A stretch of 64,000 nucleotides of DNA from assembly GCA_002269645.1 (NCBI GenBank), contig NIVC01001449.1, positions 62,001 through 126,000 on the forward strand, given 5' to 3'. Numbering within the stretch: position 1 is the first letter of the stretch; each line of letters opens with the position of its first letter. This document shows positions 3,238 through 63,740 of the stretch, in pieces. The stretch comes from Macrostomum lignano (taxonomy: Eukaryota). The position numbers and the translations under genes are program-made. A model generated the notes under the pieces. The model was not told the origin of the DNA, did no database searches, and saw only the letters and a program-made list of their open reading frames with translations.

Positions 3238-3284
3238 TAATCTCCTCGAAATCAGGAGCATTACACCTTTTTGTGTTCTATTTC

Positions 3285-6721: not shown

Positions 6722-6727
6722 TTTATT
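6722..6727 (-). terminator. Candidate polyadenylation signal of the PKD1-like gene
   Basis: First AATAAA (minus strand) about 270 nt after the stop codon; no transcript evidence. Confidence 0.3.
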
Positions 6728-6996
6728 AGTTTTAAACAACAATTATCTTGAGTAAATCCATATGTAAGCTCGTATGTGAAAGTGATGCTTTACAAATTAA
6801 TCGCGTAAAAAGTTCATTCAAGCTCGATCACATGCTGATATGCAGAAATGGGTGAGATGATTTCCCATTCGAAAAAAATCCTTAGTAATCACTGCTATAC
6901 TATATAAGCCTATCAATTAAGTGTCTAAAATAGACTTTTCAGTTGAAAAATTACCGAATTAAAAAGAGTCATTAGCCTAAAGGGCTTCAAAAGTTA

Positions 6997-7199
6997 TTAT
7001 TTCTGCTTCGAGTCGAACTCTTCTCCTTCGCCGGAGGTGACATCTTCTGGCGCAGACTTTTGCACTAAGCGGTACATTATCGACTCGAAGGTGTCAATGG
7101 AATCTACGTGAGTCCGGTTGCGAATGCTGGTTAGTTTCAGCTCCACATCGTTGAGGCTTGTGAGCCAGTCTGAAGTGTCAGCGTTGGATTTGCGAATTA
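6997..7199 (-). CDS. PKD1-like last exon, cytoplasmic C-tail
   Basis: Acceptor ...aaacag| at 7200, phase 1; encodes VIRKSNADTSDWLTSLNDVELKL...EEFDSKQK, stop TAA 6999-6997. Confidence 0.7.
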
Positions 7200-10100
7200 C
7201 TGTTTCAGTTTACCTATTAATAATTTAATAAGGCTTTAAGGTGGCGGGGAGTGTTGGCAGGGGAGACAGTGGCGAGGCAGTGATATTCCAGCACCAAAAT
7301 TTCCCACCCGAGCGCAGGAGCCGCCCAAAAATGGATGTGGATCATGGTAAAAGCAACGTCCTGCTTACCTTCTTCCGGGCTTTCAATGTACACTGGATCG
7401 GGGCGGCCACGAGCAATTTTCTTTAAGCTATTCAGTATGTAATCGATTATCTTGAAGTTCTCCTCTTCTGGCGCATCCTCCATTTCCTGACGAACCTCTT
7501 CGTAGCTGTCATTGAGAATAGCCACAAACATGTTGAGCACAATGTACATGATAAAGCTGATGTAGGCCAGGAATATTAGTTTAGCTTTCAGGCCGTTTCG
7601 ACTGATCACAGCCACATCGAATTTTCCAAGCATGACTGAGAACTGGGTGGACATGGCCTGCAGTACTGAGTAGTACTGCGCCTCGTGCCTTCCCAGGTAC
7701 AGATAGTGCAGCAGGGTGAAGGCTATGAATGCAATGCTGAACACCCAGAAGAAGGACTTCAGCTGATCTAGCGAACGCGTCAAAGTGCCCAATAAGTGAC
7801 TCAGATTTCGGCTAAAACGAATCATGCTCAAAAATGACAACTGAACAAGGAATGTTGCGATACCCAGAAGGTAACAAAATGTCTCGTTCAGATACATGAC
7901 GTAGCGAAGATTTGTGCTCAAGCCGCTCTTCGAGTTCTGCATAGCCTCCAGGGCGGTGACAGTCGCCATGGAGCGCATGACGTAAAAGGCGGCGGCGCAG
8001 ATGAGGCACACAAACGCGGTCAGGTTGAATATGTTCCAAACGCTTTTGAAGTAGGCGCAACGCTCACGGGACAAGTCATAGTAGGCCTTTACTAGGAGGC
8101 ATAGGGTCAGCAGTCCAGTCAGGATTTCTGATATCAGCGCGAAAAGTCCCATTACACCGACGTATCTGAAATGGATCGAATTAAGTTGTCTTGTTAGCTC
8201 CTACTACATTTTTTTATGTTGAAGATGTTTAAGTTAAAGATACAATACAACTACTATTCCTTAAATAAATTCTAATTTGAAAGTATGATGCGCAAAATGA
8301 CTTTCTTATTTACTATTCATTTCAAGAATAAGAGTATCAGCCCAACCCTTACCTGTACAACCGAGTAGTGTAAACCTGGGTTGCAGTCACCGCCCCACCA
8401 AACGGATAAAATTCAGTAGCAAACAAAACTGAACTGAACAGGTTGACATTGGGATAGAACAGATCCACCTCGACGAACACGGCTCTGGTGTAGTTGTCAA
8501 GCCAGTTAGCCTCCTTGAGCTGATGCAGCAAGCTCTGAGCCGCAGCTGCATCATTAGGCAGTACAACAGTGTAGCCTCCACCAGCATAGATGCCCTGCTG
8601 TCCCCAGTAAGGCAGGCTGTTCGTCACCCGGGCTTCCAGACCGGAGAAGGCGAGATCAAATGCCGAGATCCCGTCGCTGAAGTTGCAAGATCGCTGAGCC
8701 CTCCAGCCAGGTTCGAAGCAGCTACGCTGGTCCCGTCCGAAACTGTACGCTGCTGATCCGCCAAGGTTGTCTCTGCTCACTGGCGCTATGCGTAGCTGCC
8801 TAAGCGTGGCGTGACCCAAGCGAAAGCCTGTAAAGTCCGCTATATACTTGCGCTCCCATGCGCTCATGCTTAAACCGTTGAGTCGATCCAGTGGGTAAAG
8901 CCCAGGTAGAAGAGTTTTCTCTGCGTACACAAAGTAGTCGCCTCGAGTCTGTACGTTTGCTAGCCCTGTTGCCGATACGTCCGGGTCACTCTGATCGAAT
9001 AGATGAGCCTTTATGCTGGCGTGCAGGCCGTAGGTGAAGGGCTCAAGATTGCCATAGCAGATGCAATAGAGCAGTGCCAGCAGGAGACAGCTACCGATTA
9101 TTTCTACTGCTGTTTTCTTTGCCTTGCGTCTCAGCTCGCTGCTCTTCTCAATCTCCTCTACTTCGTGCAGATATCGAAAGCCCTCTGCGATAATCAATTT
9201 TTATGTTGAGTTAAAATAAATTGTTGATCACAGCTAAGGATGTCTTTTTAATGGACAATAGTAGAAAAGGTATGTTTAAATTATGAATTAAAAAAATTAA
9301 AGTGCAGAAGCTCACCCGCATGCGTTGCAGGATCTCTGAATCGAACTCGAACAAAGTCCATGTCTTTAGCGTCGTAATCTTTTCTTAGCAACACAGAGAC
9401 GAATAATCCAATGGCCAAAACCTTTAATTAGGTTTGCATTCATGACAAGATTTATCCGTGCAATAATCAATGTGGGAGACGTCAGCAAGCGTCTTCGACG
9501 TCTTGTGGCGTCGATAGAAAATACATTACGCTGTTTTTTATTGTCTCTTTATTAAATATCGGACTCACATGCCTGTATCAATCTACAAAGCAATTTTATC
9601 GAAATAGAGGGGAAGGCCATCTGCTTTTTGACAGCTGTCTGTTCTTTTTTCTGATGTGGCAGTGGGGAGGCTAAAACAAATAATGTGCGTAATCGGTAAA
9701 ACCCTTCTATATGTTTGCATCCGTCAGCGTATTGTAAAATTACCGATTCACGATGGGCGTCGATCTATTTTGGGTGCGTCTGTAGCGTCTACGGACGTCA
9801 TAATTTTTCACCGGTTAATTACGAGTACATGTACTTTGGCCTGTAGCTACTGTTAAAATTTATTACAGTAAATACACTATGAAACTTAAGCTTGTTTATA
9901 AGAATTTTAAAATTGACATACCTTCAGTGGCTGAATCAACAGTAGAGACTCGAACAAGGATAAGAAGAAAGTTAGGAGCCACTCCTCGGACTTTGCCTTT
10001 CCCCAGTCCATGGCGTAGAATACGATAAAAATACCAGAACCGACCATGCTGCCTAGTACTAAAGCCCAGCCAATGTACTGGAACCAGTGCGGTAGGCGGA

Positions 10101-13100
10101 ATTTCTTTGTCGTTGTCTGCATGTCTGCAGGCAGACAAAGCGGTGTGCTGACCGAGTCAAGCGTGGCATACAGTTCGTCGCTGTGAAGCATTTCATTGTC
10201 CGCACAGTTCGACTGGCTGCATAAAGCAGAGCCACCAATGGCTTCGATGCGACCGTCGTCATTGACAATTGCGCCATGAGAAGCTCTACGCGCTAACCAT
10301 GCTGCATCAATACGAACGCCCTCGCCAAAAGTCGGCAAAAACTCGGTACTGTCAGACTTTTTAACCAAATATGCTTTCGCTGCTGTTTTGCGTAGTTCAT
10401 CTGACTTTGAACGCTTTTCCGACTTTAAGAAAAAGATAGTAATCGCAGAGGTTACAGGCACCACGCACAGAGCGCCGAGGATAGATGTTAACAGTGCATT
10501 GACCGATATGCTCAATGGGCCAATATGCACCTTGGCACTGGCACTCGGACCGCTTTCGCCAACACCGTACCACATCGCGTTGGCAATCATAGTCATAAAT
10601 AGGATGCTGAAGCATACTCCGAGGCGCTGCAGTCGGCTAAAGTTTGTGTCCGTTTTTCGTGAAATTAACGACATCCATAGGTGGTCGTCGGTCATCTTTC
10701 TGCTTAGATTGCTACGCACTAGACCGTGGCAAAATGCTATATCGTCTTTTGATGTCAAGCCAACGGTCACAGGATCTTCCTCCGAGCTGACGGTGACTTT
10801 CTCGTTGTGAATGAAAAAGTACCTGGTTGAAAAAAGGTCGGTTTACAGTAAAAAAAATCCATGAATTACAAACCCTAAGTAGTTTCTGCACTTTAATTCA
10901 GAATTAGTCCACAGTAAAGCACTCACTTAGAGCTGTACATGGTATCGGTGACGATGATGCGGTTCAGCAACCAATCGCGCTTGTTTTCGGAGCCTTCCGA
11001 GTCATGCCAGACCAGCAGGCGCTTCAGATCGCCCAGATGACAATCACAAGTCATCTCAAAATGATTTATTGCTCCGTCAGTAAAGTTCTAAAAATACAGT
11101 TGGGGCCAATTTACTTAATTTAGTGAATATGAAAGACAGAATTAGGATACAACAGGCAAATCGATGAAGTGGATTCTTACCTTTCTGATTCCATCGTCAA
11201 GCATTCTGCAGCGCACCTGACCGCTCGTACCAATTAAGCTGAATGATATCCTCGACTCTGTGCCACTTCCCTTCTGAGTTCCAGTGTATACATCAAGCAG
11301 ATAGCGATATGGTTTTTGTTCGTCGTCCATCAGTGGTAGGTATTCAAACTGTAACCAAATTTAAAGATGCTTTATTAACTGATAAAATTTGGTTAAAACT
11401 AACCTGAAAACTGATAAAAGATTTTAATTAATTAAAATCTTGCGTGACGTAGGGTGCCTGACAGGTAAGTTAATACGGATTGCATTATTCAATTGAAAAT
11501 GAAGGAATTAAAAAACAACGTACCACTTCAGTGTCTTTCCGGTCAAACCTTCGAAGAATGATGGCCAACGGAATAAACAGGCACCAGAGAACGGCCACGC
11601 TGCTCACAACGAGGGCCGCTTCAGCCAGTTTGCCTTGCCAGTTGTCGAATAGCTTGCCGAAGTCAATGAGATTCGGTGTGAGGTTGATGCCGACGCCGAT
11701 GCTGCCAAACAAGTCGCTGCGGAACACTGGCTTGCTAGGAGGTCCCAAACCGAGAGGCTGGCAGTTTTCTTCTGATAGCGGCACCCACAAGTCGAGCGCT
11801 TCATCCCATCGCTGACAGGCGTGTTTCGATATGCTAAAGTTGTACTGCAAGTTCGGGTCGGGGCAATTAGCTGCGTCGCTCATCTGGCATGCGCGACGTC
11901 GTACGCCAATATAGTGCATGGCTGATACGTTTAGCGTTCCTCGAGGAAGGTAGAACATCGTCTGGTACTCCCATTTCTCCTCCTGACTAAGAGATGTGGG
12001 ATCTACGCTGTGAATGCTGCTTAGGTTGGCCATTGTTAGTGGCACGACAACGGACATTATAAAGTTTTCGGGACCCGGTAGAACAATCGACTGAAGGTAG
12101 ACATCCATCGTGTGATTCGGATTTATTGGTGTCACAATTACCTGAATAACATCGTCGCTGTTTTCGATTTTGAAACTGTGATAGACCATGTACCACTTTT
12201 GCTCGGGCGTCCTGTTGACGAATTCAACTTCAGGCATTGTGGTGGGCAGGGCCAATTCGTACGGCTCCACAAAATCTGCCGGGGATAAGGATCGGCGTTT
12301 CTTCTCAGTGTGGGAGCTGTGGCGTTTCCGCCAGTGTTGATATTCTTTGGGCAATTATCGTGCGTCACGATCAGCGTATTCGACATGATCTTCTTTGCCG
12401 ATTTTTGCCACAGATATGGATTGTTAACCGAAAAAATGGCCCTCACACTGCAACCGGAGTATCCGCTGATTGGGATATTTAGATTACCATGTTTTGAAGT
12501 CAACTTTGGATTGCTACCTCTGCTGCCATTTCCAAAATTTCTTCCCAGTGCGGACAAGATGGTGTCGTTGAAGTCATACTCCCCGGACACAGAATCTTTT
12601 AGCACATAAAATGTCACATCGTCTATAGTCTGAAGAACTGTATCGATCACCTTTCTGGCTCTTGAATTCACTGGCTGAACGGCCGAATCATCTCCGGTCG
12701 TATTGATCGGCGGAGAGGTAGTTGCTTCAATTGCATCGGATGTGCAGTTTTCGGTAGTTTCATTCGACTGTGGGTTGCAAAGCGTCGACAAGCGAAGACT
12801 TTCTGTCTTGACAGTGGCGTCTGAGGCTTGCCAGATGTTGGAACCAATCTTGACGAAGTCTAAATTGTGAATGAAATAAAAAATGTATTAGATTCACTGT
12901 AGTTTTACCAATCAAAAACTTTTACAGCACATTACCTTCGCCCATTTGGTAGCTAGCGTTTGGATTCATGTTTAATCGAAGATTTTTATAGACGTCAGTC
13001 ATACTGGAGAACTTTTCAACGACAACCTCCTAAAAGAAGAATATACAAAGAATTAACAAACGAATTAATCTAATTTTAAATGACCAGTACTAACGTACCT

Positions 13101-52100: not shown

Positions 52101-53685
52101 ACAATAACTTCTAAAACGAATCATAAGTATTCATACCTGATTGATAGATGGTACCATCCAGTATCGCTCCTTTGGGGGACCAACGGTATGTCTGCTGACC
52201 ACCTTTACTGCAGGACTCTCGACGGCAGAGCTATTCGAAATGAATATTTCTGAGTGATCCAAATATTCGTAATCTGAAATCAATAGTATTTTAGTTAGTT
52301 GTTGTTATCTTTAAGTATCCAAAAATGCATTCTACATCTTGAAAGTTTTTTGACAAAACACAGCAGAACAATTAGGGCAGTAAGAAACCATTTATGATTA
52401 AATCACCGGAAGCCGATACAATGAAGATACGAGCGTAATTTGTTCTACGGAGCATGGATGAAGGAATATATTATTCTGCTCATATGCGGACTACTCGTAT
52501 AAGTCGTAGAAACAACCAATGACGAGCAGAGCCATGCCTAGTCAAGTTGCCAATATTTTAACAAGCGTTAGGAAATATGGACAAAGCTATTGCTACACAA
52601 CAATTAAAACCGTGAGTACCTGCATTCGTTCAGTTTTCTACCACTAGGGTTGATGCAGATAAAGATTTATAAGACTTGAAAACCAGTTAATCCATGTATA
52701 ATAGAAGCACAGGGTTTAGGGTTTACAGTCAATTTGTGGCAGGCAAATTGCAGTAGTCAGTTGCAGACGCCACGGTTTGGAACACCCCAAGTTTAGATGA
52801 ACCTATGACCACGGATAAACAATTCTTATATTCCAGCACCCTCGCCACCCAGCTGTGTGTTTCTGATTGCTCTGATTGATTGTCTGTACAAACCGTAGTG
52901 CATTGACTGCCTGTTGCAGGGCAGCACCTCACAGGCCTGAAACGGCACAGTCGGGTCCATTGTGTAGCAGTAGTAAAAATCTTTGCTCTCGCAATTGCGA
53001 CAATAGTTTCTAGAGCGGTTCTTGGCGCCATCTCCTGGAAAGTTTGCATCAAGCTGGCACTGGTAGGGTATGGTGTGCGGTCCGGAGCTGCTCCAGTTCT
53101 GGCAGGCCAGGCCTCCTACGGTTACATTCTGCAAGCCATAGTAGTTCTTGTAGGACACAGTGCCGCATACGTCATGGCCGTAACCAGCTAAAATTCATCA
53201 AGGATAAGTTTTATGTACATTTGGAATGGCGCTGCTCAATTTTGGGGCACTAAATTGACTACTTATTCAAATTTTAAATTCCATAATAGCAAATTAAACC
53301 TTTGCTTGTTCCATATGAGTACTATGTTGAGCGAAGTATGTGAAGGTAAAATGTAAAAATGCTATGCCAGACATGTAAGCGGAAAAATGAAAGTACTCTC
53401 CGAGGCATTTTTAATCAATTATTATAAAAATATTGTAACAGGAATCTATGATTCGAATTTGATTCGATATGATTCGATTTGATTCGATATGATTCGATTT
53501 GATTCGATATGATTCGATTTGATTCGATATGATTCGATTTGATTACGAATAATAAGCCATAAAGCAATTTACAGAAGCAAAAAACCTACAATAAATTTGG
53601 TTTTTAAATCACTTTGCCAGGATACCTTTACACTCTTAAATTGTAAAAACCCACGTGCTGATAGGGCCCTTTTGTACACACACGT

Positions 53686-53719
<34 letters not shown>

Positions 53720-59700: not shown

Positions 59701-62700
59701 TATGGAGTAGGAGTTATTATTTACAAATGCGCGTGTACATGTAGATAAGAAAGTCATAAACAAAGCAAATCTTGCACTATTCAGATAGACATTTAGACGT
59801 GTACATGTGAGTCTGTCTGAAAGATGCGAGTCTGTTAGATTTGAGTTCGTCTGTTAGATAGGAGCCTTATCTATTAGGCCTGTTACAAGTTAGATTGGAT
59901 TCAATTCCTAAGAGGAAAAAACAGGTAAATGACTAAATCTACATGCAATGCGCGAACGTATATTGCAGCCCAGCTTGGACCGATTGACTCTACAGCTTAC
60001 GATCAGTCTTGGTCTTGCTGCCTATAATGGCATCCTCGGGCCTGCTGAATGACGATCTCCCGTGGCTGGTGAGGGAGACCGATAATTTGCCGGGAATTCC
60101 GTGCAACAGTGGCTGCATGCAGTCTGCAAATCGATGCAATATCGAATGGCGTGTTTCTGGTGATCAAGAAACACATTGAAAAACAGAAAAGTTGATTTCG
60201 CATTGCATTTTTACCGATTTCAAGACAAGAGAAATACTCCGTAGCATAATTATTAGCTGTAAAGTACAAGTCTCCACTCCAGGGTGTGGAATAGTATATT
60301 GCGTAGATGTCGTAAGAATACTGAACACCGTATGTGTAGTTTTCGAACTCATGGTCCGTAAGAAACTGAAAGTTTCTGGCGGCATTCGGGCCATCTCCGG
60401 TATATCTCAGGTCCGTATAGGTGAGCTGGCCTCCAACGTAGCCGATTTGCGTCAGTGGGCCTCTGGTGCACTGGCCGGGCACTGCGGACGGGTTGGAGCA
60501 CAATAAATGGCCATGCATCTGCTAGACTGTGCTCTATCGGTACTTTGACTCTGTTATACGTTAAGCTAAACCAGTTTATGATGTTAAGTAATATATTTTA
60601 CGAAGTAATTAATGGATGCTACATCAGTACGATGCTAACTGGATGTTACAACAGTGTGACGCTAACTGGATGCTACCACCATTGGAATGCTAACACCAGT
60701 GCAATGCTAATTGGATGTTACACCAGTGCGATGCTAACTGGATGTTACACCAGTGCGATGCTAACTGGATGCTGCACCAGTGTGATGCTAACTGGATGTT
60801 ACACCAATGTGATGCTAACTGGATGTTACACCAGTGTGATGCTAACTGGATATTACACCAGTGCGATGCTAACTGTATTTTACACCAGTGCGATGCTAAC
60901 GGAATGTTAAATCATTGCGTGGTGCAAAAGTTGGGGCAATCGGGAAGCAATTGACTAACCTTTCTGCATAGGCACCTGGCATGCAAAATAGTACTTGAGC
61001 GACGCATTGGCCACAGGAATCAGGCCGGCAAAGATGACGTGCCATGCAGCGTGCAGGTTGCCAGGCTGCTCCGACACCCAAGCCGAGTGATCAATCGGAT
61101 CGCCATCAATCCAGAACCAGTCGCCAGTGCTTGCGTTTCTGGTCACGCCAACGTGAAGTGTCCACGGTTGACTGCGGCGAAAAAAGTACAGTGGGTAAAT
61201 GTGTCTAATGTCAGAACTCAGAAACAGAATTTTTTTAAAAAATACGTTCTAGGCTCTAAAAATATAAATTGATTTAAACTTATGACTGAAGCTACCTCGC
61301 TGGGCTTACTGACACTGATATGACGCTATCTGTAGCTGTCACCTAGCTTTCTAAAACACAAATAAATCAATCACATTCTTGTTCTAAAAACATGAAATGT
61401 ACATGCATGACTCCATTTGATCAACTAAATTCTTACTGCTTGGTGAGAAAGTTGTACTGCAGCGCCTGCTTGGGCATAAACAGACTGCCTCGCTCTCCCA
61501 GCCACCTGTAGCTCCGGCAGTGCTTCTGTGCCGCGTCCTGGGTAGCGTTTATTGCCACCACTCGCACGCACGAATAAAACTGCGGCGTGAATCCCAGCGG
61601 ACAGTCGAGAATTCGCTTTCCAAACACGGCAACACCGTTGGGACTCAGCGAACCATTGTTCCCATTCGCAAAGTGCAATCGCAGTTTTACTGGCTGCAAA
61701 ACCTGCGGCAGTAGCACTTTTTGACTTACGGCGGTTACTGAGAACTGGAACAGAATTGGAAGGTGATTGGTATCGGTTTGTTTGCAATAAATGCAGGTCC
61801 TCAAACGCTCTGGTAGCCACTTCTCAACAACTGCGGTCAGTATTGTTTCCAATCCACCCTGAATTCTGCCTCTTTCATGGTGTCTGCTGAACCTCGCTAC
61901 CATTCTTTCTATTGCTTAGTGTTTATTACTCATAGGCGAAGCAAAATACAGTTTTCTTGCACTAAAACTAGCACATTTTTACGATTGAAAACGAGTCTTG
62001 AAGAGGGAAACAATATTGTTTTAATACCGGTCTCTATGGACGTACGACACGTAGAGTTAATAGAGGCCAAGAACCCGCATTCCTGCAGTTTCTCTATTAT
62101 TCAAACTCGTCGCTTTAAGAAAGGGTAAAGACGCACCATCCACGTCGTGTTGTAAATCTTTAGCACTTCGTCTTCTCCAAGAACTTCTTCATAGCTCAGG
62201 TAAAACTGAATAGGTTCAGACGAGCTCCGATCGAGCACCAGGTAGTTCAAGTGGTAGACAATGCCGAAGGTAATCAGAATCGTTTTGGAGTCTTCCCATG
62301 TTGAGTTCATTTCGCTGGCAAGCACTTGTGTGCTGTCTGCAAGAGTAGATAAGCAAATCAGAGGATTTAAGTTGTCGTGCGATAGCTCTCACCCATCAGG
62401 GCCAACCTCCGAAGGCACAGAGAGTGTATATGCCTGACGGTTAGAAAGTCAAGGACGCTGAATTGTATACCCTGTGTAGGAGTTTGTATGTTTGGGTGCC
62501 TACGCACAGTATCTACAATATTTTATGTGCTTAGGGGTCAGCGGAATGGGCAGAGTTGCCTCATCGCTGGTTGTGGGACGATGTCGCCGAAGATGTTTTA
62601 TCAGGGTTTCCAAAGCACTTTCGCAATTTTTTTTATAAAAATATAAAAGTACTGCTCGTACTTGTGTCATTCGGAAAGCCAAGGAGATCGAATTTCACAG

Positions 62701-63740
62701 CGGCTCGACCAGAGACAGACAGCACTTTGAGCTGCACCACCTGGGCTTGAAACGGATTTGAGAGAGAGTAGCGTCGCCTCTCCAACTCGTCCCGTGGGCC
62801 ATCAAATAGCGCCTAAATGTTAAAAAAGCAATAATGATACTAATTTTGCGCTACGTATTTAATTAACAATAAATACACCCAAAACTCACTGGAACGTCCA
62901 AGCCCCAGTCTCTGTAGTAATTCAGCATGTCCTGCCGTGGTTCGTAAGCAAATAATAAATTAAACGCGGTCGGCCGACCACTGAACGGCACGTGTAGCAC
63001 CCCAGAGCCCTGCAGCGCCAAGCCAGTAACGGTGTAGGCACAGGGCAGGTACACAGTGAAGAAGTTACTGTACGAAAGCAAGTACATAGCAAAGTGGAAG
63101 GTCTCGTCTCCAGGCCAGTCCAGGGGCAGAGAGTACACGTCGCCGGCGTAATTGTTATAATCCGCGAGTCGGCTGGCGACAGCCGCGCCCACGGGAATGC
63201 GGCTACCGAAGCCGGCGCGAACGAAGGTCTGGTTGACCACCTGGTCGCCGGTGTAGCCTGCGGAGAGTGTACAGTTTGCCAGTGAAATATTCTATTTGGA
63301 AGTTGGATATGAATTCAGCGTAGGAGAGGATTGCCTTGTGACATTATTAAGCGTGCGTAGCTAGCTCGACTAACGTGGATGCAGTAGCTCTCATATAAAG
63401 ATATTGAAGCTCCCTATTAAAATTGCTTCGCTATATCAGGATTAAGGAATTCCCTTATCAGTTGGGATACCAATGCTCAAAAAGCTTGCTATAGGATTGG
63501 AAAGCTCAAGGCAAAATGCTTAGGAGTCAAAATCTAAGAGCAGATCGGACAATTGATGTTGAAATTTTCGAAGGGGCTTACATGCAAGTATACACACCAA
63601 GAAAATAAAACTAATTGTGCACAGTAAACCGCAATGGTCCACAGTTTCTCACCCAGTGGATAGCCGTACACTTCGATCTCGCAGACGGAGTAGGCCACTG
63701 ATATATTTGCGTTGCTGCGCACTCCAAAGAAACGAGCAAC
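6997..63740 (-). CDS. Giant polycystin-1-like (PKD1L/REJ family) multi-exon gene; 5' end outside window
   Basis: About 58 GT(GC)-AG exons join in frame (one 1-nt frameshift at ~12299; joins near 51.5 kb and 52.3-52.9 kb unresolved). Domain order REJ-GAIN/GPS-TM1-PLAT-TM2-5-TOP-channel is diagnostic of the PKD1 family. Orthologue not assignable. Confidence 0.93.
7369..8165 (-). CDS. PKD1-like exon: polycystin cation channel S2-S6 and pore loop
   Basis: ORF 7217-8152; SVWNIFNL, STQFSVMLGKFD pore loop, YIVLNMFVAILNDSYEEV S6; splice sites ttcag| and gaag|gtaag. Confidence 0.92.
8353..9184 (-). CDS. PKD1-like exon: channel S1 helix and TOP domain
   Basis: ORF 8349-9197; LRQLRI, GIYAGGGYTVVL, WLDNYTRAVFVEVDLFYPNVNLF. 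Confidence 0.92.
9316..9421 (-). CDS. PKD1-like exon (end of TM5 and linker)
   Basis: 106-nt exon VLAIGLFVSVLLRKDY...; aag| and |gtgag; phases 0/1 match neighbours. Confidence 0.8.
9922..10822 (-). CDS. PKD1-like exon: post-PLAT segment and TM2-TM5
   Basis: DDHLWMSL, FSRLQRLGVCFSILFMTMIANAMWY, FESLLLIQPLK motifs. Confidence 0.92.
10927..11348 (-). CDS. PKD1-like PLAT/LH2 domain (exons 11181-11348 and 10927-11087)
   Basis: YLLDVYTG...GTESRISFSLIG and LGDLKRLLVWHDSEG...WLLNRIIV; canonical splice sites, phases consistent. Confidence 0.9.
11524..12859 (-). CDS. PKD1-like exon: GAIN-B/GPS and TM1, with 1-nt frameshift at 12298-12300
   Basis: Overlapping ORFs 12138-12791 and 11485-12354; CQRWDE...W...C GPS-like motif, PNLIDF, TM1. 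Exon length 1336 nt needs +1 nt to fit flanking phases. Confidence 0.85.
12936..13523 (-). CDS. PKD1-like REJ-end/GAIN-A exons (13299-13523, 13099-13224, 12936-13029)
   Basis: Three exons with AG/GT ends and compatible phases (0-0, 0-0, 0-1). Confidence 0.8.
13999..14717 (-). CDS. PKD1-like REJ exons (14548-14717, 13999-14435)
   Basis: CLRNCNLKISSQKELHLLAEC; NSPPLGGNCTVFPLRGIAMVTKFKISCYGW typical REJ motif. Confidence 0.88.
14805..18960 (-). CDS. PKD1-like 4.16-kb exon: three unnamed Cys-rich repeats, PKD/Ig-like repeats, start of REJ
   Basis: ORF 14801-18865 extends to acceptor at 18961; FDFGDNT...HTYKDVGNYTISVVAWNQVS and ISFGDGS PKD motifs; many N-x-S/T sites. Confidence 0.92.
19081..19227 (-). 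CDS. EB/EGF-like Cys module exon
   Basis: LNETCESDLSC...C...CLCAPGHVYHQAKC; phase 1-1. Confidence 0.75.
19391..19996 (-). CDS. Fibrinogen C-terminal (FReD)-like domain exon
   Basis: FNASW...YSRGF, FWVGTEAL, YRLRVDMWD, FSTKDQ, GGSGWWY; phase 1-1. Confidence 0.88.
20122..21342 (-). CDS. F5/8 type C (discoidin)-like domain (exons 21191-21342, 20375-20548, 20122-20263)
   Basis: VILSQTYLISAIAITGQG and FKFDVFGC motifs; phases chain correctly. Confidence 0.7.
20835..21132 (-). mobile_element. Diverged tRNA-derived SINE
   Basis: Homologous to the SINE at 46320-50174 (gcaccctggcgca, gcgacattg, acactcacacag, ggggttggcc); degenerate A/B boxes at the right end. Confidence 0.6.
21553..21811. repeat. 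50-bp tandem repeat, about 5.2 identical copies
   Basis: cgcgtgtgta recurs at 21561, 21611, 21661, 21711, 21761. Confidence 0.95.
22057..22265. mobile_element. Possible TTAA-flanked MITE
   Basis: TTAA at 22053-56 and 22266-69; imperfect inverted ends gcgc..gaat...agctccgga. Confidence 0.4.
22399..22674 (-). CDS. PKD1-like exon, unassigned module
   Basis: Open phase 1-1 exon, ctacag| and gag|gtaag. Confidence 0.65.
23527..24309 (-). CDS. C-type lectin domain (exons 24117-24309, 23527-23777)
   Basis: CPVNFYYYNGRCF; YLGI...WTHWRYGEPS...C...W...C...FLCE. Confidence 0.85.
24430..24890 (-). CDS. Divergent discoidin-like domain (exons 24679-24890, 24430-24571)
   Basis: AARIRVQW...VRFKFYGC end motif; phases consistent. 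Confidence 0.7.
25084..26359 (-). CDS. Two F5/8 type C domains (exons 26127-26359, 25084-25714; alternative acceptor 25741)
   Basis: DEWLQISF, YIMEYSDEGLHW, VVGVVTAG, AKYVAFR...RLAILG. Confidence 0.8.
25824..25850. repeat. (GGAAT)n microsatellite
   Basis: About 5 copies. Confidence 0.9.
26542..27099 (-). CDS. Cys-rich segment plus kringle-like domain exon
   Basis: CY..GN...YSG...C..W...NYCR...C pattern; phase 1-1. Confidence 0.75.
27611..29179 (-). CDS. LamG/concanavalin-like domain (exons 28633-29179, 27611-27738)
   Basis: IGFWPL, YSVCFYLY, WWHFFCLSVD, LIFG...IFCLQVF pattern. Confidence 0.7.
29836..30188 (-). CDS. PKD1-like exon 29836-30114 plus possible 12-nt microexon 30177-30188
   Basis: Open phase 1-1 exon (ttctag| ... 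aca|gtgag); microexon flanked by attag| and |gtaagt. Confidence 0.55.
30539..32688 (+). mobile_element. Internally deleted P-superfamily element (P1)
   Basis: 32-bp TIR cacagatactaaataccctag(c/a)tgg(t/c)tcactc (30/32 match); perfect 8-bp TSD GTCTGGAC; THAP ORF 30994-31356; transposase C-terminal remnant (YVGGYV...C..C) 31725-32267; no catalytic core. Confidence 0.9.
30994..31356 (+). pseudogene. THAP zinc-finger ORF of P1 (third Cys changed to Arg)
   Basis: CCAATC...MHRLP...RW...RVRSVHF...LRWNAVP. Confidence 0.8.
32942..34278 (-). CDS. Fucolectin/FTP-like domain (exons 34017-34278, 32942-33160)
   Basis: GANDG, QWWRVDMQAVWHVSEVWLY, AQFVIVR...MAEVAVY. Confidence 0.8.
34447..35141 (-). CDS. 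C-type lectin domain (exons 34928-35141, 34447-34660)
   Basis: CPIGF..HG.SCY; WQWFDGS...FW...PGNHC...WLNIEC...PFICE. Confidence 0.88.
35466..37509 (+). mobile_element. Non-autonomous P-superfamily element (P2) with THAP remnant
   Basis: Perfect 32-bp TIR cacagatactataaacactagataggccactc; perfect TSD GATAGCAC; frameshifted THAP (HCCAPTC, MHKLPKDD, KRWQQLL, SLHF, RWDAIP) ~36005-36280. Confidence 0.88.
36547..36808. repeat. 40-bp tandem repeat, about 6.5 copies, inside P2
   Basis: atcaagcggc recurs every 40 bp from 36547 to 36787. Confidence 0.95.
38557..41720 (-). pseudogene. pol: pol (protease, RT, RNase H, integrase), disrupted
   Basis: VDTGA, YIDD, TDASKYG, H..HPG...C..C, SDNGSQF; frameshifts near 41720, 41320, 41170 and an in-frame TAG at 39427. 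Confidence 0.92.
41636..42604 (-). pseudogene. gag: gag with two CCHC zinc knuckles
   Basis: IGEFD...WEAYEERLEQFF; CFRCNAQDHWAKNC and CSKCGRVGHKSDAC. Confidence 0.9.
43127..43948 (+). mobile_element. 5'-truncated Penelope-like element with GIY-YIG endonuclease and inverted pseudo-LTR copy
   Basis: VYKFSC...YIGKTKRHL..RVREH...ILESMYI...PNLN (43390-43734); ~150-bp inverted repeats ~43148-43300 / ~43787-43943; 14-bp direct repeat tttacctctatatt at 43113 and 43935. Confidence 0.88.
43862..43894 (+). ncRNA. Minimal hammerhead-ribozyme-like core (second copy on minus strand 43198-43229)
   Basis: CUGAAGA-U-stem II (gg..cc)-GAAA-CGC-GUC with palindromic ACGCGU; stem I pairing not evident. Confidence 0.5.
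44150..45100 (-). CDS. Two F5/8-like domains (exons 44913-45100, 44661-44811, 44382-44575, 44150-44282)
   Basis: ILGVVVQG...YVRSFTLSY; PIKAKIVQF...MKLELLG; FQFRGC; all splice phases chain. Confidence 0.78.
46463..49947 (+). mobile_element. Full-length P-superfamily DNA transposon (P3)
   Basis: Perfect 32-bp TIR cacagaccaagaaatataactagactgcgcat; perfect 8-bp TSD GCAGGCAC. Confidence 0.96.
46757..49584 (+). CDS. THAP9/P-element-type transposase (~942 aa if one base is restored near 49227)
   Basis: C2CH THAP with AVP box, coiled coil, ADEMS, TCDGT, FLDVPHMLKLIRN, MKVYLASQLFS, SQDFLELFF; ORFs 46655-49237 and 49207-49584 join by +1 nt in an A run. Confidence 0.93.
50625..50960. repeat. 30-bp GC-skewed minisatellite (cagcaattcccccagtaagccttgacatct)
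   Basis: About 11 copies, central ones identical, outer ones decayed. Confidence 0.9.
51892..52273 (-). CDS. Fucolectin/FTP-like C-terminal half (exons 52137-52273, 51892-51982)
   Basis: VARYAGIRK...LPEFEVFG, homologous to the exon at 63653-63740. Confidence 0.7.
52894..53187 (-). CDS. Kringle domain exon
   Basis: C...Y.G..NVT.GG.ACQNWS...PH...NYCRN...YCYTMDP...CEVLPC; 3' donor uncertain. Confidence 0.88.
53449..53545. repeat. Alternating decamer repeat (gattcgatat gattcgattt)n
   Basis: Strict alternation from 53461 to 53540. Confidence 0.93.
53687..53717. repeat. (CA)n microsatellite
   Basis: About 15 units. Confidence 0.95.
53744..53986 (-). CDS. Fucolectin/FTP-like N-terminal half exon
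   Basis: RPNDG...HYWMVDLG...IRFIRVY; phase 1-1. Confidence 0.8.
54138..54305. mobile_element. Possible short MITE
   Basis: Imperfect inverted ends ccagggacggacccgga / tctgggtccactcctgg; no TSD seen. Confidence 0.4.
55350..55490 (-). mobile_element. CORE-type SINE fragment
   Basis: cccattttacagctgg...gttaagcgtcttgctgaagg resembles the CORE/MIR domain; tRNA-like A box at the right end. Confidence 0.5.
56070..56498 (-). CDS. F5/8 type C domain (exons 56340-56498, 56070-56214)
   Basis: ISVQG...FNITYSENARYW; ALAIRVYP...RLQLYGC. Confidence 0.8.
56751..57471 (-). CDS. PKD1-like exons 57284-57471 and 56751-57179 (possibly LamG-like)
   Basis: Open frames, canonical splice sites, phases 1-0 and 0-0. 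Confidence 0.65.
57539..58125 (-). CDS. Fucolectin/FTP-like domain (exons 57898-58125, 57539-57772)
   Basis: HWLLMDLK; VLVGNN...C...CDRPIIGRF...NLQVHG. Confidence 0.8.
58509..59474 (+). mobile_element. Decayed mariner-type transposon (second family)
   Basis: TIR cttcgggtgtgtca(t/a)aagt(a/t)atgtcactg, TA on both sides; PYSPDLNLCDRFLFKWLK remnant. Confidence 0.88.
59550..60123 (-). CDS. Exons 60001-60123 and 59550-59693 (partial kringle-like)
   Basis: C..NRG..Y...NVTREGIACLPW; phase 1-1 exons; donor of the lower exon uncertain. Confidence 0.55.
60215..60481 (-). CDS. PA14/GLEYA-like or unassigned extracellular module exon
   Basis: Phase 1-1 open exon; YYSTPWSGDLYF resembles PA14/GLEYA strands; domain call weak. 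Confidence 0.55.
60610..60908. repeat. 27-bp minisatellite (atgctaactggatgttacaccagtgcg), about 11 copies
   Basis: Period 27 visible in sequence and as the TSAMLTGCY ORF repeat; intronic. Confidence 0.93.
60960..61744 (-). CDS. Discoidin-like C-half and C-type lectin domain (exons 61437-61744, 60960-61171)
   Basis: CPLGF....SC...A...C; HVG...WFWIDG...W...QPG...FACQ. Confidence 0.82.
62137..63257 (-). CDS. F5/8-like domains (exons 62890-63257, 62662-62812, 62137-62336)
   Basis: VTGLALQG...FNLLFAY; PFQAQVVQL...VKFDLLG; phases chain. Confidence 0.78.
63653..63740 (-). CDS. Fucolectin/FTP-like C-terminal exon (most 5' exon resolved)
   Basis: VARFFGVR...SVCEIEVYG; ttacag| and |gtgag. Confidence 0.75.

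What the first reader, a model, noticed from the sequence alone, without database searches (positions are those of the whole stretch)
6997..63740. Polycystin-1-like receptor of more than 6,600 aa with a very diverse lectin/adhesion ectodomain
Seen: about 20 kb of spliceable CDS with no start codon yet, carrying about 10 discoidin-like, about 4 fucolectin-like, 3 C-type lectin, 2-3 kringle, LamG-like, PA14-like, fibrinogen-C and EB modules ahead of the PKD/REJ/GAIN/channel core. Known: human PKD1 is 4,303 aa, and sea urchin REJ proteins carry C-type lectins that bind egg-jelly glycans. Inference: a multi-glycan sensor coupled to a polycystin channel (gamete, food or microbe sensing). I do not know this domain combination from a described protein, but I cannot search.
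Basis: partly seen in the sequence, partly recalled or inferred. Interest (0 to 1): 0.75.

Follow-up and report, generated by a model that had tools for sequence, protein, structure and literature searches.

The report
Giant polycystin-1-like receptor gene
The window holds a real, very large polycystin-1-family receptor gene whose extracellular part is a patchwork of binding modules, but this kind of patchwork is already common in invertebrate polycystin-1-like proteins, and only part of the claimed module list, and of the claim that it is one gene, can be verified.

Summary
On the minus strand, 63740 to 6997, my exon model has 64 GT-AG exons, 20,613 nt and 6,870 aa. It has no internal stop and no start codon, because the gene runs off the window.

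The polycystin-1 core is firm: PKD repeat, REJ, PLAT, 11 transmembrane helices, Polycystin/TOP domain and a TRPP-like channel. Two features differ from the family norm. The GPS self-cleavage motif is absent, a trait shared with Macrostomum lignano paralogues. The pore filter reads LGK instead of LGD.

In the ectodomain I can support three C-type lectin domains, three discoidin-clan modules, one kringle (plus one faint), a fibrinogen-like domain and a weak EB module. The "about 10 discoidin, 4 fucolectin, LamG, PA14" calls are not verifiable.

Unannotated DNA upstream of the Macrostomum homologue encodes the lectin and fibrinogen modules in the same order. This supports one gene for the proximal ectodomain. 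Continuity across two transposon-bearing introns is unproven. There is also a frameshift or indel near 12.33 kb.

Kringle, fibrinogen, discoidin and C-type lectin modules each occur on other PKD1-like proteins, and a 6,593-aa abalone member exists. I file this as a new member of a known kind, of moderate-to-low interest.

The parts
6997..63740 (-). Whole modelled transcription unit (5'-truncated by the window edge): 64 exons, 20,613 nt CDS, 6,870 aa
   Evidence: Own exon-chaining model corrected with Macrostomum-guided alignments. All junctions are GT-AG and there is no internal stop.
6997..7169 (-). Terminal exon with TAA stop at 6997-6999; cytoplasmic tail
7369..8165 (-). Exon encoding TM7-TM11, the TRPP-like channel (PKD_channel 8164-7495). 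The pore filter reads L-G-K at 7632-7624 instead of L-G-D.
   Evidence: Pfam 103-106 bits; alignment to PKD2L1 5z1w; coordinates
8353..9184 (-). Exon encoding TM6 (S1) and the Polycystin/TOP domain (8963-8357). Its start was corrected from 9041 to 9184.
   Evidence: Pfam 100-103 bits; Macrostomum-guided correction
9316..9421 (-). Small exon missed by the ab initio model (end of TM5 and loop), conserved with Macrostomum
9922..11348 (-). Three exons (11181-11348, 10927-11087, 9922-10822) encoding the PLAT domain (11303-10782) and TM2-TM5
   Evidence: PLAT 52 bits; PC1 6a70_B E 3e-37; 1,736 library hits to 9910-10842
11524..12275 (-). Exon with the GAIN-B-like region, the degenerate GPS position (11820-11661, 'FRSDLFGS' instead of CxCxHLT) and TM1 (11610-11556)
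   Evidence: Alignments with 11 relatives and 5 Macrostomum paralogues; no Pfam GPS hit at E<=1
12304..12351 (-). Frame discontinuity. The conserved '...NPYLWQKSA...THDNC' (one frame) and 'KKRRSLSPADFVEPYEL...' (another frame) lie too close for an intron. This is a frameshift, an assembly indel or a lineage-specific insertion. The model splices around it (donor 12449, acceptor 12275) and so deletes about 58 conserved codons.
13299..18960 (-). Exons 14805-18960 (4,156 nt), 14548-14717, 13999-14435 and 13299-13523. They contain about 850 aa of unclassified N-terminal sequence, PKD repeats (strong one at 16399-16201, weak one upstream) and the REJ domain (15454-13400).
   Evidence: Pfam PKD 47-50 bits, REJ 53+103 bits; tblastn with P0007 E 1e-112; junctions fixed
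19081..19227 (-). EB/EGF-like cysteine-rich module (weak support)
   Evidence: Pfam EB E 0.0027, 18.2 bits, below cutoff; colinear with Macrostomum L001
19391..19996 (-). Fibrinogen C-terminal-like domain (19922-19454), single exon
   Evidence: Pfam 54.3 bits, E 2e-14; conserved upstream of the Macrostomum core, E 5e-34
23527..24309 (-). C-type lectin domain #3 (two exons), 'EPS' and no WND
   Evidence: Pfam E 0.0023, 19.1 bits; conserved in Macrostomum L001 3273-3731, E 3e-8; motifs
25084..26359 (-). Two adjacent discoidin (F5/8 type C) modules
   Evidence: 35.3 bits jointly; 21.4 and 20.1 bits singly
33003..34273 (-). Discoidin-clan module of the fucolectin/NedA type ('WWRVDM' signature)
   Evidence: Pfam F5_F8_type_C_2 E 9e-4 and F5_F8_type_C E 0.009
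34487..35141 (-). C-type lectin domain #2 (two exons), no EPN/QPD/WND
   Evidence: Pfam 24.6 bits, above the 22.6 cutoff; motifs
38343..42816 (-). Intronic Ty3/gypsy-type LTR retrotransposon (gag, protease, RT-RNaseH-integrase ORFs) flanked by 127-nt LTRs at 96% identity. It inflates the 35.1-44.1 kb intron.
43061..43181 (-). Candidate alternative first exon: ATG at 43181, 'MLIFSFIFLCLLK...', with weak phase-1 donors at 43118 and 43061. It is phase-compatible with the C-type-lectin-#2 exon.
   Evidence: opposite-strand control gave 0 candidates
44150..45382 (-). Middle block of five exons between the two large introns: unclassified beta-rich modules with one faint discoidin signal
   Evidence: Pfam E 0.06; coding score +6.8 nats/100 nt
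46462..49948 (+). Intronic P-element/THAP9-like DNA transposon with perfect 33-nt terminal inverted repeats and an uninterrupted transposase ORF of about 860 aa. It inflates the 45.4-51.9 kb intron.
52894..53187 (-). Kringle domain (53158-52918), single exon
   Evidence: Pfam 39.5-39.9 bits, above cutoff; similar to the kringles of PKD1-like P0136
58396..59663 (-). Two small exons forming a kringle-like module (faint)
   Evidence: PDB HGF kringle E 0.09; no Pfam hit
60960..61744 (-). C-type lectin domain #1 (61609-60972, two exons), 'QPG' and no WND
   Evidence: Pfam E 3e-4, 22.0 bits, just below the 22.6 cutoff; motifs
26542..32290 (-).
   Evidence: No Pfam, PDB or homologue hits; AF2 of 28635-29177 is all-beta but pLDDT 42
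51892..63740 (-). 5' block of 20 exons (4,030 nt).
   Evidence: Coding score +7.0 nats/100 nt, 20/20 in the best frame; only faint discoidin-clan signals, E 0.12-0.13

Best explanation
This is a single, very large gene of the polycystin-1 (PKD1/PKD1L/REJ) family from an animal whose closest sampled relative is the flatworm Macrostomum lignano. It is transcribed right to left and is cut off at its 5' end by the window.

Shown. The C-terminal roughly 3,200 aa form the family's standard machine. In order: PKD repeat(s), REJ domain, a GAIN-like stalk, TM1, an intracellular PLAT domain, TM2-5, and a last six-helix TRPP-type channel module with a TOP/Polycystin domain between S1 and S2. In front of this lies at least 3,700 aa of exon-shuffled extracellular modules, joined mostly by phase-1 introns. 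These include three C-type lectin folds, three discoidin-clan folds, one or two kringles, a fibrinogen-like domain, an EB-like module and many unclassifiable beta-rich modules.

Inferred. Like other family members, the protein probably sits in the membrane of sensory cilia or sperm as the receptor subunit of a heteromeric complex with PKD2-like channel subunits. Its long ectodomain would bind extracellular ligands or matrix, or bear mechanical load, and would gate cation entry.

Two differences from the textbook mechanism. The GPS self-cleavage site is gone, so the ectodomain is predicted to stay covalently attached, with no shed N-terminal fragment or exposed tethered agonist. The pore-filter aspartate is a lysine, so the protein is more likely to modulate a partner's pore than to form a Ca2+-selective pore alone.
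For: - Core identity: Pfam PKD, REJ, PLAT, Polycystin_dom and PKD_channel all above cutoff. PDB: PC1 E 3e-37 for PLAT/TM1-5; PKD2L1/PKD2 E 1e-49 to 1e-42 for the last 6 TM. 11 TM after model correction. 1,736 library relatives, named PKD1L2/REJ-like where named.
- Real exons: 64 GT-AG exons with no internal stop. 49/49 ectodomain exons are coding-positive and in-frame best under a core-trained model.
- One gene, at least for 35.1 to 7.0 kb: median intron 241 nt. In M. lignano the unannotated DNA upstream of PAA69298.1 encodes, on the same strand and in the same order, the module before C-type lectin #3, C-type lectin #3 itself, and fibrinogen + EB, running into the core.
- The two giant introns are explained by a 4.5-kb gypsy insertion and a 3.5-kb P-like insertion. 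The exon blocks on either side share phase (1-1) and coding signature.
- No strong hydrophobic segment in the first ~5,800 aa.
- GPS loss. LGK filter.
- Functional inference rests on the literature. Planarian pkd1L-2 and pkd1L-1 act in mechano- and chemosensory neurons with pkd2 genes (PMC11291080). The sea urchin REJ lectin domains are thought important in gamete recognition, and antibodies to SpREJ1 induce the acrosome reaction (PMC1934368). The PC-1 C-type lectin domain activates PC-1/PC-2 (PMC7728438).
Against: - No transcript evidence.
- The 5' end, the start codon and the signal peptide lie outside the window.
- Continuity across the 35.1-44.1 kb and 45.4-51.9 kb introns is only inferred, and a signal-peptide-like ATG exon exists at 43181.
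- The junction 22380->21392 needs a weak donor.
- The frame discontinuity at 12.30-12.35 kb means the assembled sequence does not encode the conserved GAIN-region block in one frame.
- My ab initio model had at least four local errors wherever homology allowed a check, so unverifiable ectodomain junctions probably contain more.
- No ligand-binding motif was confirmed.
- No PKD2-like partner is in the window.
Confidence: 0.6

Rival explanations
1. There are two or more genes. A PKD1-like gene of about 5,200 aa starts at an internal first exon (for example ATG 43181) and runs from C-type lectin #2 to the stop. The modules upstream (63.7-44.1 kb, possibly split again at 45.4-51.9 kb) belong to one or two separate secreted multi-domain lectin/adhesion genes on the same strand.
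For: - A signal-peptide-like ORF 'MLIFSFIFLCLL...' has phase-1 donors that are phase-compatible with the next exon. The opposite-strand control gave 0 candidates against 2 independent ones on the gene strand.
- After removing the transposons, the two introns are still 4.5 and 3.0 kb, against a median of 241 nt.
- Conservation with Macrostomum is shown only for modules from about 24.9 kb downward.
- Among relatives sampled, only the mucin-rich abalone protein exceeds 4,406 aa.
Against: - The donors of the candidate exon are weak (PWM 1.1-1.4), and AT-rich intron sequence readily yields hydrophobic peptides.
- No terminal exon or stop is required upstream.
- All exon blocks share strand, phase-1 junctions and the same coding signature.
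- The 5'-most exon and the blocks bordering the gaps begin and end in mid-module style, like the internal exons.
- Transposon insertion explains much of the intron size.
Confidence: 0.28
2. The locus is a broken gene or pseudogene, or it encodes only a secreted ectodomain. The frame discontinuity at 12.30-12.35 kb is a genuine frameshift that terminates translation before TM1.
For: - Two frames, both conserved against six Macrostomum proteins, abut within about 33-47 nt, with no GT/GC...AG pair that keeps both.
- The only plausible splice removes about 58 conserved codons.
- Two transposons sit in the gene.
Against: - This is the only disruption found in 20.6 kb.
- Every exon downstream of it is open, conserved (38-55% identity to Macrostomum) and has full-length Pfam matches.
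- The coding signature is uniform.
- Single-base indels are common assembly errors.
- Both transposons are intronic.
Confidence: 0.1
3. The distal 'ectodomain exons' are not real coding sequence, that is, chance open frames chained by a permissive model.
For: Most distal modules have no Pfam, PDB or homologue hit, and the model was self-trained.
Against: - 25/25 distal exons are positive and in-frame best under a model trained only on core exons, at +6.8 to +7.0 nats/100 nt against -2.8 for open intronic controls.
- The distal blocks contain a kringle above the Pfam cutoff and a C-type lectin domain at E 3e-4 that is assembled correctly from two exons.
Confidence: 0.02

Closest known systems
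Macrostomum lignano PAA69298.1 (P0007; 'PKD domain-containing protein', 2,685 aa) and its paralogues A0A1I8FTT6, A0A1I8GED8 and others
   Same: Closest long relative: 29% identity over the PKD/REJ exon and 38-55% over the GAIN-B/TM/channel exons. It has the same core order and the same replacement of the GPS CxCxHLT by FxSxLFGS. Fibrinogen-like, EB-like and C-type lectin modules lie in the same order in the DNA just upstream.
   Different: The annotated Macrostomum model stops short of those upstream modules, so it is 5'-truncated. [quoted passage not shown] No counterpart could be shown for the window's distal ~3,000 aa, because only 10 kb of upstream DNA was retrievable.
Human polycystin-1 (PKD1, 4,303 aa) and PKD1L2/PKD1L3
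   Same: Shared parts are REJ, PLAT after TM1, 11 TM, a TOP domain and a TRP-like last 6 TM (PDB 6a70_B E 3e-37). It also has a C-type lectin domain in the ectodomain, and ectodomain-dependent channel activation is documented for PC-1 (PMC7728438).
   Different: No LRR, WSC or LDL-A modules were detected. There are 1-2 detectable PKD repeats instead of 16. The GPS HL|T site is absent. The last 6 TM are more PKD2-like than PC1-like (E 1e-49 against 1e-37), with a conserved pore helix but an LGK filter. The ectodomain is longer and contains kringle, fibrinogen-like and discoidin modules.
Sea urchin receptor-for-egg-jelly proteins SpREJ1-10 (PMC1934368, PMC2120838)
   Same: PKD1-family receptors whose variable ectodomains carry lectin modules (C-type lectin, SUEL), EGF, WSC and PKD repeats. 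The SpREJ1-3 lectin domains evolve under positive selection and are thought to matter in gamete recognition; antibodies to SpREJ1 raise intracellular Ca2+ and induce the sperm acrosome reaction.
   Different: SpREJs are 1,450-3,716 aa. All but SpREJ10 keep a GPS. None is reported with kringle, fibrinogen-like or discoidin modules.
Other invertebrate PKD1-like models with mosaic ectodomains: amphioxus 'PKD1L3' CAH1271112.1 (fibrinogen-like), P0136 (at least 5 kringles), amphioxus XP_078669286.1 (C-type lectin), Ptychodera XP_070577742.1 (19 LDLa + 12 Fz; 4,406 aa), Haliotis rufescens XP_048238653.1 (6,593 aa; mucin-like + EGF)
   Same: The same conserved core with a lineage-specific, exon-shuffled ectodomain. 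Each confirmed module type of the window gene occurs in at least one of them, and one is of comparable length.
   Different: Each carries one or two module types, often as repeats. None of the 38 sampled combines C-type lectin + discoidin + kringle + fibrinogen-like modules. The abalone giant owes its size to Ser/Thr-rich mucin repeats rather than to globular modules.
Planarian pkd1L-1 / pkd1L-2 (Schmidtea mediterranea; PMC11291080)
   Same: Flatworm PKD1-family genes. They provide the functional precedent: expression in ciliated sensory neurons, and roles in mechanosensation and chemosensory feeding together with pkd2 genes.
   Different: All planarian PKD proteins are reported to be smaller than human PC1, and the extra N-terminal modules are described there as specific to PC1. 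Orthology to the window gene was not tested.

Membership tests
Polycystin-1 (PKD1/PKD1L/REJ) family | REJ domain | tested here: met
   Pfam PF02010: profile positions 1-211 at 52.8 bits and 221-450 at 102.8 bits; window 15454-13400.
Polycystin-1 (PKD1/PKD1L/REJ) family | [quoted passage not shown] | tested here: met
   Pfam PLAT 51.7 bits, profile 1-109/117. TM1 is at aa 5797-5815 and PLAT at aa 5841-5949.
Polycystin-1 (PKD1/PKD1L/REJ) family | Eleven transmembrane helices, the last six TRP-like, with a Polycystin/TOP domain between S1 and S2 | tested here: met
   11 hydropathy peaks after model correction; Polycystin_dom 2-199/199 and PKD_channel 2-225/225; PDB PC1, PKD2 and PKD2L1. Topology comes from hydropathy only.
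Polycystin-1 (PKD1/PKD1L/REJ) family | GPS motif (CxCxHL|T/S) at the end of a GAIN domain, the site of autoproteolysis | tested here: not met
   The window has F-R-S-D-L-F-G-S at the aligned position. 9 of 10 non-flatworm relatives in that alignment keep H-L-T/S there, and most also keep the Cys pair. No Pfam GPS hit at E<=1. The same loss is seen in six Macrostomum proteins. SpREJ10 also lacks a GPS (PMC1934368), so this does not exclude family membership.
Polycystin-1 (PKD1/PKD1L/REJ) family | GAIN domain fold | tested here: inconclusive
   AF2 with a 6-sequence alignment gave pLDDT 47: beta-rich, followed by a TM helix. Foldseek matches had TM about 0.2 and are meaningless.
Polycystin-1 (PKD1/PKD1L/REJ) family | PKD (Ig-like) repeats in the ectodomain | tested here: met
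   One repeat at 47-50 bits and a second weak one at E 0.0055. This is far fewer than the 16 in human PC1.
TRPP (PKD2-type) pore-forming channel | Pore helix followed by an L-G-D selectivity filter | tested here: not met
   The pore helix is conserved, but the filter reads L-G-K against PKD2L1 L-G-D in the HMMER alignment. That this Asp is the filter residue is my own knowledge of the PKD2 and PKD2L1 structures.
C-type lectin (Ca2+-dependent carbohydrate-recognition domain) | C-type lectin fold signature (Pfam Lectin_C) | tested here: met
   Three copies at 24.6, 22.0 and 19.1 bits (cutoff 22.6), E 4.5e-5 to 2.3e-3. Copy 3 is conserved in Macrostomum, E 3e-8. Only one copy is above the curated cutoff.
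C-type lectin (Ca2+-dependent carbohydrate-recognition domain) | EPN or QPD motif plus WND motif for Ca2+/sugar ligation | tested here: not met
   QPG, none, and EPS; no WND in any copy. Motif definitions are from established knowledge of C-type lectin domains.
Discoidin / F5/8 type C domain | Profile match to PF00754 / PF22633 (clan) | tested here: met
   Three modules at E 3e-4 to 9e-4, and 35.3 bits for the adjacent pair, above cutoff. Three more are faint (E 0.06-0.13). The claimed number of about 10 is not met.
F-type lectin (fucolectin) | F-type fold with the His/Arg/Arg fucose-binding triad | tested here: inconclusive
   One module hits PF22633 at E 9e-4 and has a 'WWRVDM' signature. 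By eye, the Arg-rich 'NRxDCCxxR'-type segment is not present. No rigorous alignment to a solved F-type lectin was made.
Kringle | Profile match with the six-Cys pattern | tested here: met
   One copy at 39.5-39.9 bits, above the 34.3 cutoff. A second is faint (HGF kringle E 0.09). A third claimed copy has no support.
Fibrinogen-related domain (FReD) | Profile match to Fibrinogen_C | tested here: met
   54.3 bits, E 2e-14, profile 41-202/221; 32% identity to the FReD of amphioxus 'PKD1L3'.
   No Pfam hit at E<=5, no PDB sequence hit at E<=10 and no homologue. The AF2 model is too poor to search. The folds remain unknown.

The most novel reading that the evidence does not exclude
All 64+ exons form one transcript encoding a receptor of more than 6,870 aa. 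It would be the most module-diverse ectodomain so far attached to a polycystin-1 core. It would also belong to a flatworm clade in which the GPS autoproteolytic site, generally assumed to be cleaved in all PKD1-family proteins, has been lost. Such a protein would be a natural experiment for whether ectodomain shedding or a tethered agonist is needed for polycystin signalling. It might serve as a multi-ligand chemosensory or gamete-recognition receptor.
Probability: 0.35. Interest if true: 0.5.

Novelty: new member of a known kind. Interest (0 to 1): 0.3.

Why it matters
If the single-gene model holds, this would be one of the largest polycystin-1-family receptors known. It would show how far exon shuffling can load a conserved 11-TM channel-coupled core with different binding modules.

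The more specific point is the conserved loss of the GPS cleavage motif in this gene and in at least six Macrostomum paralogues. GPS cleavage is necessary for a functional human PC-1 (PMC1934368), and mutations in the GPS site cause renal cysts (PMC7728438). A clade that does without cleavage would be a useful comparison for how ectodomain signals reach the channel.

On the practical side, the work shows that the public Macrostomum gene model is 5'-truncated. It also shows that ab initio models of such genes need transcript support.

As a family member, however, the gene is not surprising. Mosaic ectodomains with these same module types are already widespread in annotated invertebrate PKD1-like proteins.

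Tried and rejected
- Pfam on unspliced open segments of 64-43 kb found only one kringle, because the domains are split between exons.
- The word-indexed homologue search on the 1,396-aa exon gave nothing at 1e-10, and on the joined unassigned modules nothing at 0.01. This tool misses relatives at about 25-30% identity, since tblastn finds Macrostomum at E 1e-112.
- Self-BLASTP for internal repeats found none.
- A within-gene profile search for further discoidin modules found none above a reversed-sequence control.
- A PDB sequence search of the unassigned modules gave only a faint HGF kringle.
- AF2 of the 'LamG-like' exon without an alignment gave pLDDT 42.5.
- AF2 of the GAIN-B exon with five Macrostomum rows gave pLDDT 47, and its Foldseek matches (TM about 0.2) were discarded as meaningless.
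- Exact look-ups of P0002 and of a window ORF were not on record, so the source organism was not identified.
- I looked for a signal-peptide start in the 10 kb upstream of the Macrostomum gene. It was inconclusive because of minisatellites.
- I enumerated all GT/GC-AG pairs that might bridge the 12.33 kb frame change. None keeps both conserved blocks.
- Three ab initio exons were rejected as spurious: 36506-36555 (inside a 40-nt tandem repeat), 37827-37998 (a weak bridging exon next to the gypsy element), and 21753-21813 (inside a perfect 50-nt tandem repeat).
- My guess that the ORFs at 3.4-4.6 kb are mariner-like is not supported by Pfam.
- Rfam found no RNA families in the window.
Full report
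**1. What is in the window**

The long open segments between 7 and 64 kb lie almost entirely on the minus strand. Pfam on the largest segments identified the polycystin-1 core at once: PKD domain, REJ, Polycystin_dom and PKD_channel.

Unspliced segments of the distal region gave only a kringle, because the other domains are split between exons. I therefore wrote a self-training exon-chaining gene finder using a 3-periodic Markov coding score, splice-site weight matrices and phase-consistent dynamic programming. The 5'-most exon starts at 63740, behind an acceptor and in the middle of a domain. The TAA stop is at 6997-6999.

**2. Correcting the model**

Wherever a relative allowed a check, the ab initio model had local errors. 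Guided by Macrostomum lignano PAA69298.1 (P0007), I made these changes:
- extended the big exon to 14805 (GTAAGT donor);
- moved the next acceptor to 14717;
- added a 106-nt exon at 9316-9421;
- moved an acceptor from 9041 to 9184, which restored the missing TM6.

Three weak bridging exons were removed: two lie inside tandem repeats and one lies beside the gypsy element.

The final working model has 64 exons, all GT-AG, with 20,613 nt of CDS and 6,870 aa. It has no internal stop and no start codon. Its exons in window coordinates, 5' to 3' on the minus strand, are:

63653-63740, 62890-63257, 62662-62812, 62137-62336, 61437-61744, 60960-61171, 60215-60481, 60001-60123, 59550-59663, 58396-58467, 57898-58125, 57539-57772, 57284-57450, 56751-57179, 56340-56498, 56070-56214, 53744-53986, 52894-53187, 52137-52273, 51892-51982, 45194-45382, 44913-45100, 44661-44811, 44382-44575, 44150-44282, 34928-35141, 34487-34660, 33993-34273, 33003-33160, 32061-32290, 31610-31819, 31056-31128, 29836-30130, 29604-29726, 28633-29179, 27611-27738, 26542-27099, 26127-26359, 25084-25714, 24679-24890, 24430-24571, 24117-24309, 23527-23777, 22380-22674, 21191-21392, 20375-20548, 20122-20263, 19391-19996, 19081-19227, 14805-18960, 14548-14717, 13999-14435, 13299-13523, 13099-13224, 12936-13029, 12449-12859, 11524-12275, 11181-11348, 10927-11087, 9922-10822, 9316-9421, 8353-9184, 7369-8165, 6997-7169.

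Junctions in the ectodomain that have no homology support should be treated as approximate.

**3. Is it more than chance?**

A coding model trained only on the homology-verified core exons scores all 49 ectodomain exons positive, and each scores best in its modelled frame. The mean is +6.4 nats per 100 nt. The other two frames average -6.7. Length-matched open intronic segments average -2.8, and only 22% of them score above zero. The three exon blocks separated by the big introns score 6.0-7.0. The test is somewhat circular, because the exons were selected by a related score, but the margin is large.

**4. The core**

| Feature | Evidence |
|---|---|
| PKD repeat | 47-50 bits; a second weak copy at E 0.006 |
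| REJ | 53 + 103 bits, together covering profile positions 1-450 |
| PLAT | 52 bits |
| Polycystin_dom | 2-199/199 |
| PKD_channel | 2-225/225 |

Against solved structures, the PLAT + TM1-5 part matches human polycystin-1 (6a70_B, E 3e-37). The last six helices match PKD2L1 and PKD2 (E 5e-49 to 1e-40). Hydropathy gives exactly eleven strong helices, all in the last ~1,070 residues.

Two departures from the family norm are clear:
- **GPS motif.** In an alignment with relatives, the GPS "CxCxHL|T/S" motif is replaced by "FRSDLFGS". The same replacement is present in P0007 and in five more Macrostomum paralogues. Pfam GPS does not hit even at E<=1, whereas it hit 25 of the 38 relatives surveyed.
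- **Pore filter.** In the HMMER alignment with PKD2L1 the pore helix is conserved, but the filter reads LGK instead of LGD.

The GAIN fold itself could not be tested, because the AF2 model had pLDDT 47 and the fold matches were meaningless.

**5. The ectodomain**

Supported modules:
- **Fibrinogen_C:** 54 bits.
- **Kringle:** one copy at 39.5 bits.
- **C-type lectin folds:** three copies at 24.6, 22.0 and 19.1 bits (cutoff 22.6).
- **Discoidin-clan modules:** three copies at E 3e-4 to 9e-4. The adjacent pair scored 35.3 bits together. One of the three is of the fucolectin/NedA subtype.
- **EB module:** weak, E 0.003.

Only faint signals exist for three more discoidin-like pieces (E 0.06-0.13) and for a second kringle (HGF kringle, E 0.09).

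Nothing supports the "LamG-like", "PA14-like" or third-kringle calls. The modules are not recent duplicates, since self-BLASTP gave no off-diagonal hit. A profile of the three good discoidin modules finds no further copies above a reversed-sequence control.

None of the three C-type lectin domains has the EPN/QPD + WND motifs of sugar-binding C-type lectins. The ectodomain has 143 cysteines and 143 N-glycosylation sequons, as expected for an extracellular mosaic.

**6. One gene or several?**

Arguments for one gene:
- The median intron is 241 nt. From the fibrinogen exon to the big exon the introns are only 120-165 nt.
- The two giant introns contain a 4.5-kb gypsy element with LTRs at 38343-38469 and 42690-42816 (96% identity), and a 3.5-kb P-like element with perfect 33-nt inverted repeats at 46462-46494 and 49916-49948.
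- The exon blocks on both sides share strand, phase-1 junctions and coding signature.
- The best independent evidence comes from Macrostomum. In M. lignano no gene is annotated in the 10 kb upstream of PAA69298.1. Yet that DNA encodes, on the same strand and in the same order, relatives of three parts of the window gene: the module before C-type lectin #3 (E 4e-4), C-type lectin #3 itself (E 3e-8 to 1e-8), and the fibrinogen-like + EB + early big-exon region (E 5e-34). These run straight into the annotated core.

The proximal ectodomain is therefore a conserved part of this gene lineage, and the public Macrostomum model is 5'-truncated.

Arguments against:
- After subtracting the transposons, the two introns are still 4.5 and 3.0 kb.
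- An ATG at 43181 opens a signal-peptide-like exon ("MLIFSFIFLCLL...") with weak phase-1 donors compatible with the C-type-lectin-#2 exon. The opposite-strand control gave none.
- The junction 22380->21392 needs a weak donor.

I estimate about 0.85 that everything from 35.1 kb down is one gene, and about 0.6 that the whole 63.7-7.0 kb span is.

**7. A frame problem**

At 12304-12351 two reading frames are each conserved against six Macrostomum proteins: "...NPYLWQKSA...THDNC", and then "KKRRSLSPADFVEPYEL...". They lie too close for an intron, and there is no usable GT/GC...AG pair between them. The only plausible splice (12449/12275) deletes about 58 conserved codons.

The likeliest reading is a small assembly indel or a lineage-specific non-triplet insertion. 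A true disabling frameshift is possible but unlikely, because every downstream exon is intact and conserved.

**8. How it probably works (inferred)**

By homology, this is the receptor subunit of a heteromeric polycystin complex with PKD2-like subunits.

The literature gives three precedents:
- Planarian pkd1L-2 is needed for mechanosensation and pkd1L-1 for chemosensory feeding behaviour. They act in ciliated sensory neurons that co-express pkd2 genes (PMC11291080).
- The lectin domains of sea urchin SpREJ1-3 are under positive selection and are thought to be important in gamete recognition. Antibodies to SpREJ1 raise intracellular calcium and induce the sperm acrosome reaction (PMC1934368, PMC2120838).
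- The C-type lectin domain of human PC-1 activates PC-1/PC-2 by engaging glycans on the PC-2 TOP domain (PMC7728438).

The long ectodomain could therefore bind external ligands or matrix, bear force, or act on partner TOP domains.

The lost GPS site predicts an uncleaved ectodomain that stays covalently attached. The LGK filter predicts a modulatory rather than a Ca2+-selective pore contribution. Both are predictions, not findings.

**9. Comparison with what is known, and novelty**

An exhaustive HMMER search with the PKD1-specific exon found 1,736 relatives. The named ones are PKD1L2/REJ-like proteins of flatworm, molluscs, hemichordate, echinoderms, amphioxus, cnidarian and vertebrates.

I surveyed 38 long relatives with Pfam. 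All 38 have PLAT, and 36 have Polycystin_dom and PKD_channel. Their N-terminal modules vary: WSC, LDLa, EGF, Fz, CUB, SRCR, HYR, MAM, fn3, Lectin_C (4), F5_F8_type_C (3), F5_F8_type_C_2 (2), Kringle (1, with at least 5 copies) and Fibrinogen_C (1). A Haliotis rufescens member is 6,593 aa, with one core behind a mucin- and EGF-rich ectodomain.

The theme and every confirmed module type are therefore already in the databases. What I did not find is one protein that combines them. No paper in the searched library describes such a combination.

I file the gene as a new member of a known kind. The most interesting particular is the clade-wide loss of the GPS motif.

**10. Surroundings**

There are no Rfam families in the window. 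Five tandem-repeat arrays lie in introns. The ORFs in the 7 kb downstream of the stop codon have no Pfam identity. The source organism was not identified. Its closest sampled relative is Macrostomum lignano, and the window's G+C is 38-48% per 2-kb window.

Noticed in passing
window 46462-49948 (+): P-element/THAP9-like DNA transposon with perfect 33-nt terminal inverted repeats, sub-terminal inverted repeats (46534-46591 / 49829-49886) and an uninterrupted transposase ORF of about 860 aa (THAP, Tnp_P_element, RNase-H-like and GTP-binding insertion domains). It looks recently inserted and possibly autonomous.
   Followed up: partly
window 38343-42816 (-): Ty3/gypsy-type LTR retrotransposon in the same orientation as the host gene. 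It has 127-nt LTRs at 96% identity and open gag (zinc knuckle), aspartyl protease, RT, RNase H and integrase segments. I described it by its parts only.
   Followed up: partly
L001 1-10000 (Macrostomum lignano NIVC01001334.1:183111-213178): The public gene model PAA69298.1 is 5'-truncated. Unannotated upstream DNA encodes a discoidin-like module, a C-type lectin domain, and a fibrinogen-like plus EB-like region, colinear with the window gene. Two minisatellites (about 700-1200 and 3800-4660) interrupt it.
   Followed up: partly
window 12304-12351 (-): Frame discontinuity inside the conserved GAIN-region exon. No canonical or GC-AG intron can bridge it. It is probably an indel in the assembly or a non-triplet insertion.
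   Followed up: yes
window 43061-43181 (-): Signal-peptide-like ATG exon ('MLIFSFIFLCLLKRAPLP...') inside the large intron. It could be an alternative promoter/first exon or a chance ORF. A weaker candidate lies at 50395-50407.
   Followed up: partly
window 21552-21812, 36547-36807, 50674-50946, 53447-53544, 60693-60909: Intronic tandem repeats: 50 nt x 5.2 (100% identical), 40 nt x 6.5, 30 nt x 9, 10/20 nt x 5-10, and 27 nt x 8. The first two generated spurious 'exons' in the ab initio model.
   Followed up: yes
window 7624-7632 (-): The pore selectivity-filter position reads Leu-Gly-Lys where PKD2L1 has Leu-Gly-Asp, a charge reversal in an otherwise well conserved pore helix.
   Followed up: partly
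P0172 = Haliotis rufescens XP_048238653.1: A 6,593-aa PKD1/REJ-like protein with a single core behind thousands of residues of Ser/Thr-rich mucin-like repeats and an EGF array. It clusters at 90% identity with a 3,121-aa H. cracherodii 'receptor for egg jelly-like' protein. This shows that giant family members are already annotated.
   Followed up: partly
window 1-6996: Several ORFs of 100-160 aa on both strands at 3.4-5.5 kb, downstream of the gene's stop, have no Pfam match. My initial impression that they are mariner-like was not supported.
   Followed up: partly
window 52137-53986 (-): In the model, the kringle exon (52894-53187) sits between exons that look like the N- and C-terminal halves of one discoidin/fucolectin-like module (53744-53986, and 52137-52273 + 51892-51982). 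This is either a nested-domain arrangement or a sign of missed exons.
   Followed up: no
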